The notes under the pieces are model-generated. The model saw only the letters and a program-made list of their open reading frames with translations, was not told the DNA's origin and made no database searches. This document shows, in pieces, positions 1,417 to 17,136 of a stretch of 18,034 nucleotides of DNA. Within the stretch, counting starts at the first letter, position 1. Each line of letters begins with the position of its first letter. The stretch spans positions 1 to 18,034 of the forward strand of contig NW_021824605.1 of assembly GCF_006345805.1 (NCBI RefSeq). Direction: 5' to 3'. This stretch comes from Octopus sinensis (lineage: Eukaryota). A program made the position numbers and the translations under genes.

Positions 1417-1447
<31 letters not shown>

Positions 1448-1610
1448 CGCGCGCGTGCATGTGTGAGTAGGGCGGGCGTGTGTGTGTGTGTGTGTGTGTG
1501 CGGGTGGGGGTGGATGGGTGCGCGCGCACGTGCATGTGTGTGTGTAGGGCGGGCGTCTATGTGTGTGTGTACGGGCGGGTGTGTGTGAACGGGCGGGTGT
1601 GGTGTATGTG
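1412..1610. repeat. Compound (TA)/(TG) microsatellite with interspersed GGGCGGG units
   Basis: Directly visible; GGGCGGG occurs four times. Confidence 0.9.
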
Positions 1611-3810: not shown

Positions 3811-5685
3811 AGATGGTGTACAAGTCTCGTTGCTGGGCGATATTTACCTTCTCTCCGTTTGAATCTTATGTTGTACATACAAACAAGCCTTTATCTCTTC
3901 CATAATTAGGTGAACATAACGAAGCTCTTGTCCCTGAACATTAATTAAATACATATTCCACTAAAGGCTTTTGTATATTTGTGTACAATATGATTTATAT
4001 GTCACATAAACATTGTTCTACATTTGACATGTGCGATAAAACATTAACCTTGTTGATTTTATTCTTCAACATGTTAAACACTGCTTTATATATCACATCC
4101 GACCTCCTTTTGTATCTCTTGTAATTATTGTTGCTTGTAATAGATTTTCTTCGGTTTGTAAATACATAGCGAAGCAGCAAAGTACTTCAAATTTTCTGTT
4201 TAAACAACTGCGGTTGCATCTATCGCTTTACTTAACGGTTTTGTTCGATTTTGTGGATGTTCAGGGATTTCAAGTTTCGCTAATGATCGTAAATGTTGGT
4301 TGTTATCGTCATCGTCATCGTTATCGTCATCGCTATTGCTCTTGTTGTTGTGTGTGTATGTGTGTATACGTGTTGTGCGTCTGTTTCCGTGTGCATCTGT
4401 ATGTGTGTGTGTGCGGGGGATGTTAGGTTTATTTACTGCAGTTAGACGAGAGGTTATAAAAGCCTTCGCAGCAGAAAGTAAACCAAAATAAACAGGTTTT
4501 GTTACCCTCTGTTCTCAAACAAAAAGTAATTGGATGGTTCTGCCTTGCTTCCACACTGCCTGGGTTCTACTGAGAGACCAAGCACCGATTACTTACAAAC
4601 AGGTCCTATGAGCAATGCGGTCAAAGATCAAAACAAGGTTATTTGTACATTTGATTATGTTCCGCAGAGTAAAGGTTATAAGCTGTAGACAAACTAAATT
4701 AAATTTTACTGTGCACGAAAATGTATCAACTGTTTAAACCCGCCACCGAATAATAACCAGTATGTACATTAGACATCAAGGCATTTCAACTAAGTATTGG
4801 ATTGTATCTGATTTAAATAGCAATTGCCATGAAAATCCGAACCTATATGGTTTCAAAGCAAAATTAAACAACCGAATATTACGGCTTCAGCACAACTTAG
4901 AGCAATAAATTTCCTAGATTCAACACCGGTGAAGTATTATATGAGGAATTTTTTATGGCCTCACAGAAGAGATATGATCAAAGTCCTGTATCTCGTATAT
5001 TAAGTGGACAATACTAGACCTTAGTATGTTTCAATTATCTCGATGATTCTCAACCGTTTTTTTTTTTTTGCCTATTTAGCATTTTCTTTTGGTTTCTATT
5101 TTACTCAGGTGAACCTTCGTAGCCATTCCATGTTTCAAAAACATCCAATCATAATTAAATATTATTAGAAATTGTCTAAAAAGTTGCTGAAACTTTTTAT
5201 ACTCTATTGTGTATTGTAGTTTTACTAATTTATTGCATTTCGTTTTTCTGTGTGGTTTGCAGATAAACTTTAACAACAAAATCTTAGATGGATCCGATTG
5301 AGGACCAACGTGATAAGCCTTTTTCTGAAACCTTAAGTTAGACAACTACTATAAGTCAGTAGATAGTGAAGGATTTCCAGTTTCAATAAGCTTGATCTTA
5401 GTTGTAGAATACGGGTCCACTGCTTCGCCTGTCGCTGAAAATACACAAAAACGTCATTCAGTCATTTTATTCCAGCTAAAACCAACGGAAAATTCTTCAT
5501 CTGATTATAAAAAGAATGGAAGGGAATGTTCCATGGATTCATACCCGTTGGTACATTACTACTGAAACGGCTCTCGACTGTCATTGGATTCTTCTCCTTA
5601 CAGTGAACATAAAGATAATGACATTATTTACATTATTTACGTTATTTACATTTGACGGATATTTCTCCTCATTTTGTTTGTTGTT

Positions 5686-5731
5686 AATACAAAGTTTCGA
5701 CTGATATACCCTCCAGCCTTCATCAGGTGTC
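5686..5731 (-). ncRNA. Type I minimal hammerhead ribozyme-like motif (left arm, degenerate)
   Basis: GACAC-CUGAUGA-A-GGCUG-(10-nt loop)-CAGUC-GAAAC-UUU-GUAUU. Core and stem II are intact; G16.2 is changed to U and stem I has one mismatch. Confidence 0.7.
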
Positions 5732-5794
5732 CTGGGGAAATTTCGAACCTGGGTTCTTATTCCTAAGGTATTTTTCGATGTTATTATTGGTCAT

Positions 5795-5858
5795 TGCTTG
5801 GAATCGAACTCGAGACCACGGGATTAGTAGCTCGCGCTTTTAACTACTATGCCATATA
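5795..5858 (-). promoter_or_regulatory. tRNA-like head with Pol III A and B boxes
   Basis: Minus strand reads TGGCATAGTAG (A box, 5844-5854), then GCTACTAATC (anticodon-loop-like), then AGTTCGATTCC (B box, 5800-5810). Each box has one deviation from consensus. Confidence 0.65.
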
Positions 5859-5880
5859 CCCGTGGGCATATGGCGTAGCC

Positions 5881-5882
<2 letters not shown>

Positions 5883-5930
<48 letters not shown>
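5883..5930. repeat. (TAA)16 microsatellite within the right arm
   Basis: 48 nt of perfect TAA repeat. Confidence 0.95.
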
Positions 5931-5932
<2 letters not shown>

Positions 5933-5979
5933 TCGAAAAATACCTTAGGAATGAGAACCCATGTTCGAAATTTGCCCAA

Positions 5980-6025
5980 GACACCTGATGAAGGTTGGAG
6001 GGTATATCCGCCGAAACGTTATGTT
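5980..6025 (+). ncRNA. Type I minimal hammerhead ribozyme-like motif (right arm)
   Basis: GACAC-CUGAUGA-A-GGUUG-(10-nt loop)-CCGCC-GAAAC-GUU-AUGUU. Core is intact and stem III has an ACGU palindrome; there is one mismatch each in stems I and II. Confidence 0.72.
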
Positions 6026-6761
6026 TACCACAAACAAGATGAGGACAAATATCCGTCAAATGTAAATAATGTAAACAATCTAAATAATGTACATAATTCC
6101 TCCTCTCTTAAATATAGAACTGTATTAAGATAATGACGATTATAAAGTTCCATTGAGCCAGCATCAGCTGCTACATGGCGGGACTTGGATCTGTGATATA
6201 CTCTTGCATCAATTAAGAGACTGGCGAGAAGAGCGGTCGAAATATTTTGGAAGACAGAACTCCATACGAGAGTGTCTGTATCTTTGCCGGCTGCGATTGA
6301 GTGAGTGGTGCTGCCAACAGACTTTTCTGTGACCGAACGGCTCAAACCATAGAGCGAACTATCCACCACTTCCGTAAAGAGGAGCGCACAAAGGATAGCT
6401 TCATCACTGCCCACTCAATGCAGCGTCTGTACAGGAAATCACGTGATAGATTGGCTAAAAGATGATAGTCAGATGCATTGAGAGAAAGAGGGGGACAGAC
6501 AAATCATGAACATTGAGTAACAGATACACGGATAAATAGATATGTGCGCGCGTGTGAGTTTGCTTGTATGTATGTCTAGTTAGAGACGGACAAACGGACA
6601 GACGAAGGTAGGCAAAATAGATTTCACTCGCCTTCATATATAAAAAAAAATAATAAACAATTAGTAACAGAATTTATGCTATTATAAATCACATTTGCCA
6701 TATGTCTGTCTCTCGACAACTTCCTTTCTACCCCCGCCTCTCTCTCAGTACTTACAGATTT

Positions 6762-6767
<6 letters not shown>

Positions 6768-6803
<36 letters not shown>

Positions 6804-6936
6804 GAATGTAAATATGTATATATATATATATGTGTGTGTGTGCGCATGTAAATATGTACGTGTATATATATGCATGCAAGTATGTATGTATATATATATA
6901 TATGTATGCATGTAAATATGTATGTGTATATATATA

Positions 6937-6971
<35 letters not shown>

Positions 6972-7032
6972 CATATATATATGCATGGAAATATGTATGT
7001 ATATATATATATATATGTATGCATGTAAATAT

Positions 7033-7085
<53 letters not shown>

Positions 7086-7126
7086 TATATATATGCATGG
7101 AAATATGTATGTATATATATATATAT

Positions 7127-7158
<32 letters not shown>

Positions 7159-7159
7159 C

Positions 7160-7198
<39 letters not shown>

Positions 7199-7262
7199 TA
7201 TATGCATGAAAATATGTATGTGTATATATATATATATATGCATGCAAATATGTGTGTATATA
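6768..7262. repeat. Complex (TA)n minisatellite with recurrent GCATGNAAATATGTA anchors
   Basis: Anchors at 6804, 6844, 6872, 6908, 6983, 7021, 7095, 7204 and 7240. Confidence 0.9.
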
Positions 7263-7883: not shown

Positions 7884-7975
7884 TTCTTCTCTTTCGTTTT
7901 CTTCTCCTCCACCTTCTTTTTCTTCTTCTTCTTCTCCTTCTTCTTTTTCTTCTTCTTCCCCTTCTTCTTCTTCTT

Positions 7976-8045
<70 letters not shown>

Positions 8046-8282
8046 TATTATTATTATTATTATTATTATTCTAACTCTACTTCATCTTTCTCTTCTTTTT
8101 CTTCTCCTTCCTCCTTCCTCTTCTTCTTTCTTCTTCTTCTTCTTTACCTTTTTCTTCACCTTCTCCTTCCTCCTTCTTCCGCTTTCTTCTTCTTCTTCTT
8201 CTTCTTCTTCTTCTTCACCTTCTCCTTCCTCCTTCTTCTTCTTCATCTTCTCCTTCTTCCTCTTCTTCTTCTTCTTCTTCTC

Positions 8283-8313
<31 letters not shown>

Positions 8314-8362
8314 TTCTTCATCTCCTTCTTCTTTCTTTCTTCTTTCCACCTCCTCCCCATCC
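7884..8362. repeat. (TTC)n/(TTA)n/(CTT,CTC) compound repeat; long homopyrimidine tracts
   Basis: Directly visible. (TTA)n at ~8005-8069 separates two pyrimidine tracts. Confidence 0.95.
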
Positions 8363-9704: not shown

Positions 9705-10103
9705 GCGGCGAACTGGCAGAAACGTTAGCAGCCTGGGCGAAATGCTTAGCGGTATTTCGTCTGCCGCTACGTTCTGAGTTCAAATTCTGCCTAGGTCGAC
9801 TTTGCCTTTCATCCTTTCAGGGTCGATTAAATAAGTACCAGTTACGCACTGGGGTCGATATAACCGACTTAATCCGTTTGTCTGTCCTGGTTCGTCCTCT
9901 CTGTGTTTAGCCCCTTTTGGGTAGTAAAGAAATAGGCATTTCGTCTGTCTTATGTTCTGAGTTCAAATTCCACCGAGGTCGACTCTGCCTTTCATCCTTT
10001 CGGCGTCGATAAATTAGGTACCAGTTGCGTACTGGAGTCGATCTAATCGACTTTCCCGCACGCCCAAAATTTCGGGCCTTGTGCCTAGTTTAGAAAAGAA
10101 TAT
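9705..10103 (+). mobile_element. Dimeric tRNA-derived SINE: full monomer (tail A) followed by a headless monomer (tail B)
   Basis: A box TGGCAGAAACG (9714-9724) and B box AGTTCAAATTC (9777-9787). The body GTTCTGAGTTCAAATTC..GGTCGACT.TGCCTTTCATCCTTTC occurs twice (from ~9771 and ~9954). Confidence 0.9.
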
Positions 10104-10199: not shown

Positions 10200-10513
10200 T
10201 CGGTGCGTACATAATTCCAGCTTCTTGTGATGGTCGGGCATCTCTAAAAGCGCATTTTTCAATGTTCGTCGAATCCTGCTTCAAGTTGCCTGATTAAGGG
10301 CGATACCATTAACCCTCTTAATCCCAACATTTGTATATCTCCTCTTAACTCTCATCGGTGGATAGCATGTCCCAGCTTCATTCTCACACACCACTTCAAA
10401 TGCTCTTGAAGAATCTAGCGAGAGCTGCAATCCAGACGAACAAGACATAACCCCAACTCTTTCAGCAATGGGCACAAAACAACATCTTTTTCTATAGTCA
10501 GCAGATAGTGGAG
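10200..10513 (-). mobile_element. Possible very old RTE-like LINE C-terminal remnant (host of the 10514 SINE)
   Basis: Weak minus-strand resemblance only: LLKELGL, ILQEHLKWCVRM (cf. LQERRLRW.GHV.RM) and RGDIQMLGL. Confidence 0.25.
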
Positions 10514-10805
10514 ACACATGGTCTAGTGGTTAGAGAAGCGGATTCGCGGTCGAGGGATCGCGGGTTCGAATCTCAGACCGGGTGATGTGTGTTTTTATGA
10601 GCGAAACACCTAAGCTCCACGCGGCTCCGGCAGAAGGTAATGGCGAACTTCTGCTGACTCTTTCGCCACAACTTTCTCTCAATCTTTCCTCTGCATCTTG
10701 CAGCTCACCGGCGCCCCGTCCAGGTGAGGTACCTATACGCCAAGGAAACCGGGAAACCGGCCGTTATTAACCAGGCATGGCTCGAGAAGGAACAAACAAA
10801 AGAAA
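10514..10805 (+). mobile_element. tRNA-derived SINE (family 2) with perfect 16-bp TSD
   Basis: A box TGGTCTAGTGG, B box GGGTTCGAATC, and an A-rich tail ACAAACAAAAGAAA. TCAGCAGATAGTGGAG lies at 10498-10513 and 10806-10821. Confidence 0.9.
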
Positions 10806-11389
10806 TCAGCAGATAGTGGAGGTCTACCCGACCGAACTTGGCAAAAGGAAGTCAATATATTTAGCTTCAGGATGAACTCAGCCTGTAGCTGGTACCCTTT
10901 TAGTTGTAGCAGCTTTCCAACGGCTAAGCCAAAGCAGAAGTTTTTTTAAGCCAGCAGTAGAAGCTGTTCAACATCTAAGATGGTAAATATAGATACAATT
11001 AATTTTGATTGTTATGTAAAGAAGCAAAGAAAAGGCGGAGCAGTTCCTCAGTTGTCCTCCCTGTTGGCTGTTGTAAAAATAATGATATTCATATTAAGCT
11101 AATATATTTTCTCTTTTATCATATGTCTGAATATTCCGTTGTTGTTAAATGTTTTAATAATTAAACATACTCTCATTTGTCTAATTACCTACTTATTATG
11201 CGAGTGGCATTTAAAATAAATGTAATCCATCATCATTATAATGGTTAATTAACTCTTTCAGACATTTCGCACCTGATAACTACATTGAGTGGCTTCTATT
11301 CTGACGTTGGAATGAATCAATGATAGGACTTATTTGTGTTCTCTCATTCTGCTAGAAATAGCATCCCAGTCACAAAATACTCAAACCAC

Positions 11390-12372
11390 GTTATATCGTA
11401 TTGAAAAGGCGAAGGACGGTGTGAACGTATCCTGGCGAAACCACTACAGATTATTTTTGCAGAGCTTTCTTGCAAATCGCAAACTGCCAAGCAAACTGAA
11501 GGGTGGAATAATATGCCCAATGCATAAAGGTGGATGCAGAGCAGATGCCAAAAGTTATAGACCTATCTCTCTGTTTTCACACATCAGCAAAGTCATGGAA
11601 CGGATAGTCAGAGGGAAACTAATCGCATTCCTTGAAGAAAATAACTTGCTGAGTGATACCCGGCATGGCTTTCGACTATGTAGGAGCTGCCTGACCCAGC
11701 TCTTACAACATTATGACTGGGTGTTGAGGCAGTTACTCATCAACTCAAATGTGGACCTGATATAACTTGCTTTGCGAAAGCTTTTGACAAAATGGATCAT
11801 GGTATGATATGCCACAAACTGCGTGATTTCGGCAACGCTGGAAAACCTGGAGAGTGGTTACATGACCTTCTGAAAGATAGAAGTTAGGCAGTGGTGGCCA
11901 ATCGACTCACCTCAAATAAAACACGCATAGTGAGTGATGTTCCACAGGGCACTGTCTCGGGACTACTGCCTTTCATAGTGGCCCTCCCAGATATGCCCTC
12001 AGCTGCCCGGATGGCCACTCTTGCTAGCTACGCAGACCACACGAAAGTCTCGGAGAAAATACAAAACCCTAGCGATGGTGCACACATGCAGCAGGAGTTG
12101 GACACAATTTACAGTTGGGCTGAGGAAGATAATATGCAGTTTGATGCTGGCAAACTCCAAGCCCTGCACTGCCAGCGTATAAAGTGGAACGTAAAACTTA
12201 CAGGCTGCACTAAATCAGTGCAGGACCTGGGTATCGACATGAGCGATGATACCTCTTTCCAAGTGCACATTACCAAGATGGCTGGCTGGATCTTGAGAAC
12301 TTTCAGAACCAGAAAGAAGGAAATCATGATCGTTCTCTGGAGGAAATTCGTCCTCAGCTGCCTGGACTCCTG
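11390..12372 (+). mobile_element. Decayed LINE reverse transcriptase (CR1/L2/Jockey group)
   Basis: Motifs YRPISLFSHISKVMERIV, RHGFR..RSCLTQLL, FAKAFDK.DH, VPQGTV, SYADHTK (YADD with D>H, 12029-12040), MQFDAGK, and DLGI.MSDD..FQVHI. Frameshift near 11770 and stop near 11885. Confidence 0.92.
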
Positions 12373-12450
12373 TGAGGAGTGTCTTAGCTGTTTCAGCCTT
12401 TCCCAGTAACAGAGCTGTTGCAATGAGACGATCTTCCAGAGTAGTCCAGG
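12373..12450 (-). mobile_element. Short inverted piece of the same LINE family (WKIVSLQQLCYWERLKQLR)
   Basis: 12412-12439 matches 12953-12980 at 27 of 28 nt. Confidence 0.8.
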
Positions 12451-12467
12451 CATAAATATATGTAATG

Positions 12468-12519: not shown

Positions 12520-12990
12520 CTGTTATTAGAGAGATCCTCCTCTGATGGGTAGCATTTGATGACTAAGGGAGTTTGATATCGCTCCCTTCATTTACGCCTC
12601 CTGCCGCGAGGTAGATTCACCTGGGACTCGCGACAGGAAGAGATCCAGTTTTGATTTGAAAACACCTACATCCACTTTGTGTAGGTACCCCGCTCAGGCT
12701 CTTTGGGAGACTATTAAAAAGCTGTGAGCCCCGGAAACCCAGGCTGTTGCAGTAAACAGTCTTGAAACGCGACGGCATTACTGGGATCTTTCGCACCATG
12801 CAGTGGAGACTCGTTCTGGAATTTGTGTTGCTTTCAATGCCAAAATTTGGCACAATGCTTTCCAGGATCTTCCAGGTGTGTATTACTGCACATCTCTCTC
12901 GCCTTCGCTCCAGTGAATAGAGTCTTAAATGCTTCAGCCGTTCAAGGTAGCTGAGCTGTTGCAATGAGACGACCTTCCAGGGTTGGGATC
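12520..12990 (-). mobile_element. 3' end of a CR1/L2/Jockey-group LINE ORF2 plus short 3' UTR
   Basis: QQLSYLERLKHLRLYSLERRRER..WKIL..GSQLFNSLPK, then LDLFLSRVP in a shifted frame; a typical C-terminus for this group. Confidence 0.85.
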
Positions 12991-16957: not shown

Positions 16958-17003
<46 letters not shown>

Positions 17004-17029
17004 TGTATATATATATATATATATACATG

Positions 17030-17063
<34 letters not shown>

Positions 17064-17072
17064 TACATACAT

Positions 17073-17136
<64 letters not shown>

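What the first reader, a model, noticed from the sequence alone, without database searches (positions are those of the whole stretch)
5612..6137. Palindromic mobile unit: tRNA-headed, twin-hammerhead element inserted as one piece with an 11-bp TSD
Seen: two ~168-nt arms in head-to-head inversion (about 90% identical); a central hairpin CTATGCCATATACCC-GT-GGGCATATGGCGTAG (5847-5878) built from the two heads; Pol III A/B boxes in the left arm; a hammerhead fold and three 9-nt TGTAAATAA-type repeats in each arm; a ~35-nt extension on the right arm only; and the direct repeat AAGATAATGAC on both outer flanks. Established: Penelope-like elements carry minimal type I hammerheads in their pseudo-LTRs, often show inverted terminal structures with a 3' extension, and the schistosome Sm-alpha repeat combines a tRNA-like head with a hammerhead. 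Inference: this is a non-autonomous, Pol III-driven, SINE/retrozyme-like parasite of a Penelope-type RT whose transposition unit is the whole palindrome. I cannot confirm whether it is already described.
Basis: partly seen in the sequence, partly recalled or inferred. Interest (0 to 1): 0.85.

Follow-up and report, generated by a model that had tools for sequence, protein, structure and literature searches.

The report
Inverted pair of hammerhead-bearing tRNA-SINE copies
Two copies of a small tRNA-headed retroelement carrying a decayed Penelope-type hammerhead ribozyme lie head to head within one 11-bp target duplication, a layout typical of Penelope-like integration, so this looks like a new family of a known kind of element, seen at one locus only.

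Summary
Two 168-nt arms are inverted and 90% identical. The unit ends in 9-nt tail repeats, there is a 32-nt near-palindrome at the centre, and one arm carries a 36-nt extension. An exact 11-nt direct repeat flanks the whole (P<5e-5 in flank shuffles).

The left copy, on the minus strand, is the complete unit. It has A and B boxes in exact tRNA register, a body and a tail. The right copy keeps about 22 nt of the head; the remaining ~59 nt of the tRNA-like part (including both boxes) is absent and a (TAA)16 array sits in its place.

Each arm holds CUGAUGA, a bulged A, a 6-bp helix II and GAAA(CGU). This is the Penelope-type minimal hammerhead, and both copies are decayed. Rfam models miss it.

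The inverted head-to-head copies, the junction palindrome, the 30-40-nt tail on one end and the short target duplication together match the published signature of Penelope-like element (PLE) integration.

Best reading: a Pol III-type, SINE-like non-autonomous element mobilised by a PLE reverse transcriptase/endonuclease. The palindrome is then a product of one integration event that primed both DNA strands, not the transposing unit.

No other copy and no partner PLE could be retrieved from any collection. Copy number, family consensus and partner identity remain untested. I class it as a new member of a known kind, of moderate interest.

The parts
5612..5622 (.). Left copy of the target-site duplication, AAGATAATGAC (14 nt, ATAAAGATAATGAC, if one mismatch is allowed).
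   Evidence: No flank shuffle out of 20,000 gave a direct repeat of 11 nt or more abutting the arm.
5623..5861 (-). Left copy, the complete ~239-nt unit: tRNA-like head, body, min-HHR and (TGTAAATAA)n tail. It has no 3' extension.
5800..5861 (-). tRNA-derived head. Unit position 1 is 5861. A box TGGCATAGTAG at 5854-5844, with its T at unit position 8. B box AGTTCGATTCC at 5810-5800, 44 nt start to start.
   Evidence: 16/18 match, none in 200 shuffled windows; only a degenerate cloverleaf; no tRNA call.
5685..5732 (-). Min-HHR of the left copy. Helix I 2.x strand 5732-5727; CUGAUGA 5726-5720; bulged A 5719; helix II 5718-5713 / 5704-5699 (6 bp, intact); GAAA 5698-5695; CUU-U 5694-5691 (palindrome broken by G->U); 1.x strand 5690-5685 (4 of 6 positions pair).
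   Evidence: and direct reading.
5621..5652 (-). 9-nt tail repeats of the left copy (3.6 copies).
5847..5878 (.). Near-palindrome at the head-to-head junction (15 + GT + 15, 13/15 complementary). It extends to about 5840-5885.
5864..5885 (+). Remnant of the head in the right copy, GGGCATATGGCGTAGCCGTTAA (18/22 identical to the left head).
   Evidence: global alignment and BLAST.
5883..5930 (.). Perfect (TAA)16. It stands where the left copy has the rest of the tRNA-like part (~59 nt, including both boxes) and AATAATAA.
5923..6090 (+). Right arm: body, min-HHR and tail repeats, 90% identical to the left copy.
5979..6026 (+). Min-HHR of the right copy. 2.x strand 5979-5984; CUGAUGA 5985-5991; bulged A 5992; helix II 5993-5998 / 6007-6012 (one U.C mismatch); GAAA 6013-6016; palindromic A-CG-U 6016-6019; U17 at 6020; predicted cut 6020|6021; 1.x strand 6021-6026 (A.C mismatch, then 5 bp).
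   Evidence: direct reading, and the criteria.
6059..6097 (+). 9-nt tail repeats of the right copy (4.3 copies).
6091..6126 (+). 36-nt 3' extension present on this copy only, read here as the PLE 'tail'.
   Evidence: Literature on the tail.
6127..6137 (.). Right copy of the target-site duplication, AAGATAATGAC.

Best explanation
A short retroelement of about 240-275 nt was inserted once by the reverse transcriptase/GIY-YIG endonuclease of a Penelope-like element (PLE). The unit has three modules:
- a tRNA-derived head with Pol III A and B boxes;
- a body carrying a PLE-type minimal type I hammerhead;
- a 3' module made of (UGUAAAUAA)3-4 followed by about 36 nt.

**Proposed integration (inferred)**
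1. The endonuclease made staggered nicks 11-14 bp apart in an AT-rich target.
2. Both 3'-OH ends primed reverse transcription of element RNA.
3. On one strand synthesis began at the inner start site, giving the left copy, which ends in the 9-nt repeats.
4. On the other strand it began about 36 nt further 3', giving the right copy with its 'tail'.
5. The two cDNAs met at the RNA 5' ends and were joined by a template jump. This left a head-to-head palindrome with 2 extra nucleotides, flanked by the duplicated target.

**Later changes (inferred)**
- The arms diverged by about 10%.
- Both hammerheads picked up disabling substitutions.
- The right copy lost most of its tRNA-like part at an AAT tract that grew into (TAA)16. 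Alternatively, that copy was 5'-truncated from the start.

**Shown versus inferred.** Shown: the anatomy, the non-random A/B boxes, the ribozyme motif and the target duplication. Inferred: Pol III transcription, the PLE partner, and the order of events.
For: - **Architecture:** inverted arms, tail repeats and direct repeat. The duplication is significant.
- **Duplication versus element end:** the direct repeat has the same orientation on both flanks while the arms are inverted. It therefore cannot be element sequence in both copies.
- **Age consistency:** a 14-nt version of the repeat with 1 mismatch (7%) is about as diverged as the arms (10%). This fits one event, though the numbers are small.
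- **Ribozyme motif:** a single hit in the window, against 0.0067 expected per shuffled window.
- **PLE-specific ribozyme features,** taken from Cervera & de la Pena 2014 (PMC4209133): an unpaired nucleotide between A9 and G10.1, a G10.1-C11.1 pair, a long (6-bp) helix II, palindromic 15.2-16.2 with no helix III hairpin, and a short helix I. That paper also reports pairs of min-HHRs 100-700 bp apart on opposite strands.
- **Helix II substitutions:** two of the three differences between the arms in helix II keep pairing (G-U to G-C, C-G to U-G).
- **PLE integration hallmarks in the literature:**
  - an inverted copy at the 5' end and a 30-40-bp tail on one end (PMC8557442);
  - inverted pLTRs, 8-10-bp duplications, a 31-bp tail on one inverted pLTR and palindromes at head-to-head junctions (PMC3846280);
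  - in vitro, the enzyme cleaves and extends both strands, prefers AT-rich DNA and starts reverse transcription at two internal sites whose spacing equals the tail, and the start-site region lies roughly 90 nt downstream of the ribozyme cut (PMC11167929). Here the corresponding distances are about 70 and 106 nt.
- **Pol III head:** 16/18 match to the A/B boxes with tRNA spacing, and the unit's 5' end falls at tRNA position 1. The only other such hit in the window is a bona fide tRNA-SINE.
- **Defined 5' end:** both copies end at the same 5' nucleotide, which points to a defined RNA 5' end rather than random truncation.
Against: - Only one locus is available. There is no second copy in the window or in any searchable collection, so repetitiveness, consensus ends and solo or tandem forms are unknown.
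- No PLE RT or GIY-YIG domain is present in the window, so no partner is shown.
- Neither hammerhead is intact. The ancestral state cannot be inferred from two copies, the Rfam models give no hit, and folding energies are not better than shuffles.
- The tRNA cloverleaf is not preserved.
- A 9-nt tandem-repeat tail is more typical of LINE/SINE 3' ends than of described PLE ends (my own knowledge).
- The absence of T4 runs in the sense strand is expected from its low T content, so it is not independent evidence.
Confidence: 0.55

Rival explanations
1. It is not a separate SINE. It is a severely 5'-truncated insertion of an autonomous PLE, consisting of two inverted terminal (pLTR) fragments. The tRNA-like stretch is then part of, or captured into, that PLE's pLTR. 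The integration mechanism is the same, but the element is not Pol III-driven.
For: - Inverted pLTR-only structures, tails and junction palindromes are described for autonomous PLEs.
- Most genomic min-HHRs are single or paired relics of truncated PLEs.
- The unit length of 240-275 nt is close to the pLTR lengths of 181-218 bp reported there.
Against: - The A/B boxes match 16/18 with exact tRNA spacing, and the unit's 5' end falls at tRNA position 1.
- Both copies share the same 5' end, which is unlike random 5' truncation.
- Described pLTR promoters are of the TATA/Inr type.
Confidence: 0.2
2. It is a LINE-dependent tRNA-SINE with a 9-nt repeat tail. The pair arose either by twin priming on both strands by a LINE enzyme, or by two independent insertions with the second landing at the 5' end of the first. 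The CUGAUGA...GAAA motif has no PLE meaning.
For: - Short tandem-repeat tails are typical of SINEs that depend on CR1, L2 or Rex-type LINEs (my own knowledge).
- Non-LTR RT fragments lie in the same window at 11.3-13.0 kb.
- An ordinary tRNA-SINE with a 16-bp duplication lies at 10515-10805.
Against: - The LINE 3' end visible in the window does not share the tail.
- Two independent insertions would need an exact 5'-to-5' juxtaposition and a second insertion with a duplication of 2 bp or less.
- The unique 36-nt extension on one copy only, and the PLE-specific ribozyme features, are left unexplained.
Confidence: 0.13
3. It is a non-autonomous DNA transposon of the foldback, MULE-like or MITE type, with 168-bp terminal inverted repeats carrying subterminal 9-nt repeats and an 11-bp target duplication.
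For: Long inverted repeats with outer tandem subrepeats and 9-11-bp duplications are features of Foldback and Mutator-like elements (my own knowledge). The arms and the duplication are real.
Against: - The termini next to the duplication are not inverted repeats of each other: ATTATTTAC... on one side against AATACAGTT... on the other. The right end has 36 unmatched nucleotides.
- This model does not explain the tRNA boxes at the inner ends or the ribozyme motif.
Confidence: 0.05

Closest known systems
Sm-alpha / Sj-alpha SINE-like elements of Schistosoma
   Same: Both are short non-coding retroposons that combine a tRNA-derived Pol III head with a hammerhead ribozyme (PMC2770079).
   Different: - Sm-alpha carries a canonical type I hammerhead with a helix III hairpin that Rfam-type searches find by the thousand (the hairpin detail is my own knowledge). 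Here the motif is the minimal PLE type and Rfam models miss it.
- Sequence similarity between the two was not tested.
- The source organism here is unknown.
Insertions of Penelope-like elements (Penelope/Poseidon, Neptune, Naiad; the A. vaga Pen families)
   Same: Head-to-head inverted terminal repeats, a palindrome at the junction, an optional 30-40-bp tail on one end, a short target duplication and a min-HHR in the repeated part.
   Different: - There is no RT/GIY-YIG ORF between or beside the repeats.
- The unit starts with tRNA-type A/B boxes rather than a TATA/Inr promoter.
- It has a 9-nt tandem-repeat tail.
Metazoan non-LTR retrozymes
   Same: Small (170-400 nt) non-coding elements with a type I hammerhead that are thought to depend on PLEs (PMC7229834; bioRxiv 10.64898/2026.07.22.740005).
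   Different: - Retrozymes are defined by tandem arrays that yield circular RNA. Here there is no tandem copy.
- The two ribozymes are on opposite strands and both are damaged.
- A tRNA head is present here.
Non-autonomous Chlamys PLE derivatives such as MRC1 of Chlamydomonas
   Same: Short non-coding elements that share only the 3' end with an autonomous PLE and show PLE-type insertion structures.
   Different: Those have no canonical hammerhead and no tRNA head. The host here is different and is probably an animal.

Membership tests
PLE-type minimal hammerhead (Cervera & de la Pena 2014) | Catalytic boxes CUGANGA and GAAA in type I order. | tested here: met
   Present in both arms (5985-5991 / 6013-6016 and 5726-5720 / 5698-5695).
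PLE-type minimal hammerhead (Cervera & de la Pena 2014) | An unpaired nucleotide between A9 and G10.1, and a G10.1-C11.1 pair. | tested here: met
   A at 5992 and at 5719. The G-C closing pair is present in both arms. Criteria.
PLE-type minimal hammerhead (Cervera & de la Pena 2014) | Long helix II (6-8 bp). | tested here: met
   The left copy has 6 contiguous pairs. The right copy has 5 of 6, with one U.C mismatch.
PLE-type minimal hammerhead (Cervera & de la Pena 2014) | Palindromic 15.2-16.2 with no stable helix III hairpin (a motif that works as a dimer). | tested here: inconclusive
   The right copy has ACGU and meets the criterion. The left copy has ACUU and does not.
PLE-type minimal hammerhead (Cervera & de la Pena 2014) | Helix I of 4-5 bp joining the two flanks of the core. 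| tested here: inconclusive
   Right copy: an A.C mismatch at 1.1-2.1, then 5 pairs. Left copy: 4 of 6 positions pair, interrupted.
PLE-type minimal hammerhead (Cervera & de la Pena 2014) | Self-cleavage, and a location in the pLTR of a PLE. | not testable with these tools
   This needs an in vitro assay and the source genome.
PLE-mediated insertion | Head-to-head inverted copies with a palindrome at the junction. | tested here: met
   Criterion.
PLE-mediated insertion | An optional 30-40-bp tail on one end only. | tested here: met
   36 nt at 6091-6126, absent from the left copy. Criterion.
PLE-mediated insertion | A short target duplication around the whole structure. | tested here: met
   11 nt, P<5e-5. 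Duplications of 8-10 bp are reported for A. vaga elements.
PLE-mediated insertion | An autonomous element with RT and GIY-YIG domains that shares the 3' end. | not testable with these tools
   None is in the window, and the source genome is absent from all collections.
tRNA-derived SINE | Internal Pol III A and B boxes with tRNA spacing at the 5' end. | tested here: met
   16/18 match, 44 nt apart, A box at unit positions 8-18. None of 200 shuffled windows had a hit.
tRNA-derived SINE | A recognisable tRNA cloverleaf or tRNA homology. | tested here: not met
   No Rfam tRNA hit and no default ARAGORN call. ARAGORN gives only a poor model at -ps80.
tRNA-derived SINE | Many dispersed copies, each with its own target duplication. 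| not testable with these tools
   There is no other copy in 18 kb and no external copy. Here the duplication surrounds the pair, not each copy.
Non-LTR retrozyme | Head-to-tail tandem repeats, each with one hammerhead. | tested here: not met
   There is no tandem copy, and the two motifs are on opposite strands.
Foldback / MULE-type DNA transposon | Terminal inverted repeats that start directly at the target duplication on both ends. | tested here: not met
   The right end has 36 unmatched nucleotides, and the outermost bases do not match.

The most novel reading that the evidence does not exclude
This is one copy of an undescribed class of Pol III-transcribed, tRNA-headed SINEs whose 3' module, from the min-HHR to the tail, is borrowed from a Penelope-like element. 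The locus would then preserve a footprint of PLE enzymes priming reverse transcription from both target strands on a trans-mobilised Pol III RNA. SINE classification, as I know it, lists only LINE partners. That would make this a 'tRNA-PLE' SINE outside schistosomes.
Probability: 0.4. Interest if true: 0.55.

Novelty: new member of a known kind. Interest (0 to 1): 0.4.

Why it matters
PLEs are the least understood class of eukaryotic retroelements. Their odd insertion structures (inverted copies, a one-sided tail) were explained biochemically only in 2024. This small non-coding element shows all of these marks at once and starts with a tRNA-type promoter. If confirmed, it suggests that PLE enzymes can be parasitised by Pol III transcripts, as LINE enzymes are by ordinary SINEs. 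It would also tie schistosome Sm-alpha-type elements, animal retrozymes and PLE minimal hammerheads into one picture. On the practical side, such palindromic pairs are easily mis-annotated as MITEs or as microRNA-like hairpins: Rfam's MIR5048 model scores this locus at E=5e-13, although at 61.5 bits it falls below that family's gathering score of 160.

Tried and rejected
- **Rfam:** a gathering-threshold scan of the whole window gave nothing. E-value scans of the locus and of the head and ribozyme sub-regions gave no hammerhead or tRNA hit. They returned only hairpin artefacts such as MIR5048 and mir-10.
- **ARAGORN:** nothing at default settings.
- **Single-strand folding:** z-scores of +0.42 and -0.66, and the hammerhead is not in the minimum-free-energy structure.
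- **Other copies:**
  - BLAST of both arms against the window found none.
  - Exact patterns in viral contigs found none.
  - A back-translated arm alignment in metagenome contigs gave 240 pattern hits, none confirmed.
  - The 19-nt tail pattern in metagenomes gave 8 chance hits with no further similarity.
  - The ribozyme pattern in GTDB genomes gave 1 chance hit.
  - A six-frame pseudo-protein of the element against the 5.8-billion-cluster protein collection found nothing.
  - The same approach with the ordinary SINE at 10.5 kb, run as a positive control, also found nothing. The collection therefore does not cover this genome, and the negative results say nothing about copy number.
- **Literature full-text search** for sequence fragments found nothing.
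- **Source organism:** the closest LINE RT relatives are 50-74% identical and sit on short ENA or NCBI contigs. The organism stays unknown. My guess of a penaeid shrimp, from the microsatellite density, is unverified.
- **Pfam scan** of 150 ORF segments of the window found only weak RVT_1 matches, with no GIY-YIG and no PLE RT.
- **ORF across the empty site:** a 145-aa ORF has no significant Pfam match.
- **Rejected ideas:**
  - Fold-back duplication of a single insertion. The flanks are in direct orientation, not inverted.
  - Coding potential of the open frame through both arms. In my hand count of codon differences, nearly all substitutions are non-synonymous (only one clearly silent change, GGC/GGT); the sequences are.
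Full report
**1. What is in the sequence**

Region 5612-6137 holds two inverted arms, 5621-5788 and 5923-6090. They are 168 nt long and 90% complementary, with 17 differences split 9 transitions to 8 transversions. The outer end of each arm consists of 9-nt repeats of the TGTAAATAA type, 3.6 copies on the left and 4.3 on the right. A perfect (TAA)16 lies at 5883-5930.

An exact 11-nt direct repeat, AAGATAATGAC, lies at 5612-5622 and 6127-6137; it is 13/14 identical over 14 nt. The left copy of this repeat abuts the left arm directly. On the right, 36 unmatched nucleotides (6091-6126) separate the arm from the repeat. In 20,000 dinucleotide-preserving shuffles of the flanks, no direct repeat of 11 nt or more abutting the arm appeared. 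Sampling real window positions with the same geometry gives about 1%, but those cases come from microsatellite arrays, and this repeat is not a microsatellite.

The window contains no further copy of the arm. It is eukaryotic and rich in repeats: 19% of it is tandem repeats and 16% is microsatellite.

**2. Anatomy of the unit**

Read on the minus strand, the left copy (5861 to 5623) is the complete unit. It starts GGGTATATGGCATAGTAG. TGGCATAGTAG matches the Pol III A box (TRGCNNAGTGG) and AGTTCGATTCC matches the B box (GGTTCGANNCC), together at 16 of 18 specified positions. The boxes start 44 nt apart, and the T of the A box is unit position 8, which is exactly the tRNA register. None of 200 shuffled windows had any such pair. 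The only other hit in the real window is a bona fide tRNA-derived SINE at 10515-10805, which has its own 16-bp duplication TCAGCAGATAGTGGAG.

The cloverleaf itself is not preserved. Rfam's tRNA model and default ARAGORN find nothing, and ARAGORN gives only a poor model at 80% stringency.

The right copy keeps the first ~22 nt of the head (5864-5885, 18/22 identical). Together with the left head this forms the central near-palindrome (E=9e-5). The right copy then runs into (TAA)16, where the left copy has the rest of the tRNA-like part (~59 nt, including both boxes) followed by AATAATAA. After that it resumes homology. The two copies therefore meet 5' end to 5' end, with two extra bases (GT) between them.

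**3. The hammerhead**

Rfam's hammerhead models give no hit, even at E<=10 on an 86-nt slice. Minimum-free-energy folds are no better than shuffles.

Both arms nevertheless read as follows: [AGACAC or GGACAC] CUGAUGA A [GGYUGG AGGGUAUA UCMGYC] GAAA C(G/U)U U [AUGUUU or GUAUUA].

A descriptor requiring CUGANGA, an optional single bulge, a helix II of at least 5 bp and GAAA hits the left copy and nothing else in the window on either strand. Shuffled windows give 0.0067 hits.

Cervera & de la Pena (2014) list features of PLE minimal hammerheads that were not part of their own search descriptor:
- a nucleotide between A9 and G10.1;
- a conserved G10.1-C11.1 pair;
- a long helix II;
- a short helix I;
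- palindromic 15.2-16.2 instead of a helix III hairpin.

Here the bulged A and the G-C closing pair are present in both arms. Helix II has 6 bp in the left copy and 5 of 6 in the right. Two of the three substitutions in helix II keep pairing. ACGU is intact in the right copy and mutated to ACUU in the left. Helix I has five pairs after a 1.1-2.1 mismatch in the right copy, and four of six positions pair in the left.

At each damaged position the other copy carries the compatible base. With only two copies this cannot be turned into an ancestral reconstruction. I conclude that this is a genuine PLE-type min-HHR, now decayed in both copies. The same paper reports pairs of min-HHRs 100-700 bp apart on opposite strands, which is the arrangement seen here (about 260 bp).

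**4. How it got there**

The published structural signature of PLE insertions has four parts:
- an inverted copy adjoining the 5' end;
- an optional 30-40-bp tail on one end;
- a short duplication of the target;
- a palindrome at the head-to-head junction.

These features are described in Craig et al. 2021 and Arkhipova et al. 2013, the latter with 8-10-bp duplications and a 31-bp tail.

Frangieh et al. 2024 showed in vitro that a PLE protein cleaves and extends both target strands and prefers AT-rich DNA. It begins reverse transcription at two internal sites, and the interval between them is the tail. In their element the start-site region lies roughly 90 nt downstream of the ribozyme cut site.

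The locus fits on every count:
- an AT-rich target;
- an 11-nt duplication (14 nt with one mismatch);
- one copy ending at the 9-nt repeats and the other 36 nt further on, which is about 70 and 106 nt downstream of the predicted cut at 6020|6021;
- heads joined at a palindrome.

The duplication is in direct orientation while the arms are inverted. The 14-nt version with one mismatch is about as diverged as the arms, as expected if both arose in the same event, though the numbers are small.

I therefore read the palindrome as the product of a single integration that primed both strands using monomeric RNA. It is not a palindromic transposing unit. A Pol III transcript from the left copy's boxes runs outward on the minus strand, away from the right copy, and the right copy has no boxes, so the palindrome cannot be transcribed as one Pol III unit.

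**5. Alternatives**

(a) *Inverted terminal fragments of an autonomous PLE rather than a SINE.* The integration mechanism would be the same. The exact tRNA register of the boxes and the shared 5' end of both copies argue against it, but only a genome-wide census can decide.

(b) *A LINE-dependent SINE pair.* The 9-nt repeat tail is LINE-like, and LINE fragments are present in the window. However, the visible LINE 3' end does not share the tail. Two independent insertions would need an exact 5'-to-5' hit with no duplication of their own. The one-sided 36-nt extension and the PLE-specific ribozyme features would also go unexplained.

(c) *A foldback or MULE-type DNA transposon.* The ends abutting the duplication are not inverted repeats of each other.

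**6. What could not be tested**

No collection available here contains this genome. DNA pattern scans of viral, metagenome and prokaryotic genome contigs returned nothing, or chance hits only. A six-frame protein search with the element found nothing. The same search with the window's ordinary SINE, run as a positive control, also found nothing. No PLE RT or GIY-YIG domain is in the window. Copy number, consensus ends, solo versus paired forms, the partner element, expression and cleavage activity all remain open.

**7. Comparison and verdict**

The closest known things are four:
- schistosome Sm-alpha/Sj-alpha, which combine a tRNA-derived head with a hammerhead that is canonical rather than minimal;
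- PLE insertions themselves;
- metazoan non-LTR retrozymes, which are tandem, are now argued to be PLE derivatives, and are not tRNA-headed;
- non-autonomous Chlamys elements.

The element works like a SINE that depends on a PLE. It meets the structural tests for PLE-type integration and most of the tests for a PLE min-HHR. It fails the test for a retrozyme because there is no tandem arrangement, and it fails the test for a DNA transposon. I class it as a new member of a known kind. Interest is moderate. It would rise if a genome-wide census showed a large Pol III-driven family with a PLE 3' module.

Noticed in passing
window 10515-10805 (+), flanks 10499-10514 and 10806-10821: A different, ordinary tRNA-derived SINE. 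Its A/B boxes match 16/18, it has an A-rich 3' end (GGAACAAACAAAAGAAA), and it is flanked by a perfect 16-bp target duplication, TCAGCAGATAGTGGAG. Neither Rfam nor default ARAGORN calls it.
   Followed up: partly
window 11334-12409 (+); 12360-12453 and 12617-12988 (-): Decayed fragments of a non-LTR retrotransposon. There are RVT_1 pieces on the plus strand, with the closest relatives 50-74% identical. On the minus strand there are two copies of a CR1-like C-terminal segment (83-nt direct repeat, 78% identical, 541 bp apart), each lying beside an (AT)n array. The visible 3' end does not share the tail of the element studied here.
   Followed up: partly
window 6784-7239, 7884-8344, 1794-1916, 16958-17136 and many others: Microsatellite load is very high. 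Examples are (AT)~229 and (TTC)~152. Microsatellites make up 16% of the window and all tandem repeats 19%. This suggests an invertebrate genome of the penaeid-shrimp type, but that guess is unverified.
   Followed up: partly
window 9768-9870 and 9951-10053: A 103-nt direct repeat, 85% identical, spaced 183 bp apart. Its nature is unknown.
   Followed up: no
window 1443-1606: GC-rich tandem repeats with periods of 77 nt and 18 nt (GTGTGTGTGTACGGGCGG-like), embedded in TG/TA microsatellites.
   Followed up: no
window 5190-5622 joined to 6138-6414 (minus strand): When the insertion is removed in silico, a 145-aa open frame runs across the empty site. It has no significant Pfam match, so it is probably chance, but an interrupted exon or older repeat is not excluded.
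   Followed up: partly
window 5697-6014 (+): Rfam's plant microRNA model MIR5048 scores the palindrome at 61.5 bits (E=5.5e-13; gathering score 160). This is purely because the region is a long hairpin, which shows how inverted retroelement pairs can be mistaken for microRNA precursors.
   Followed up: yes
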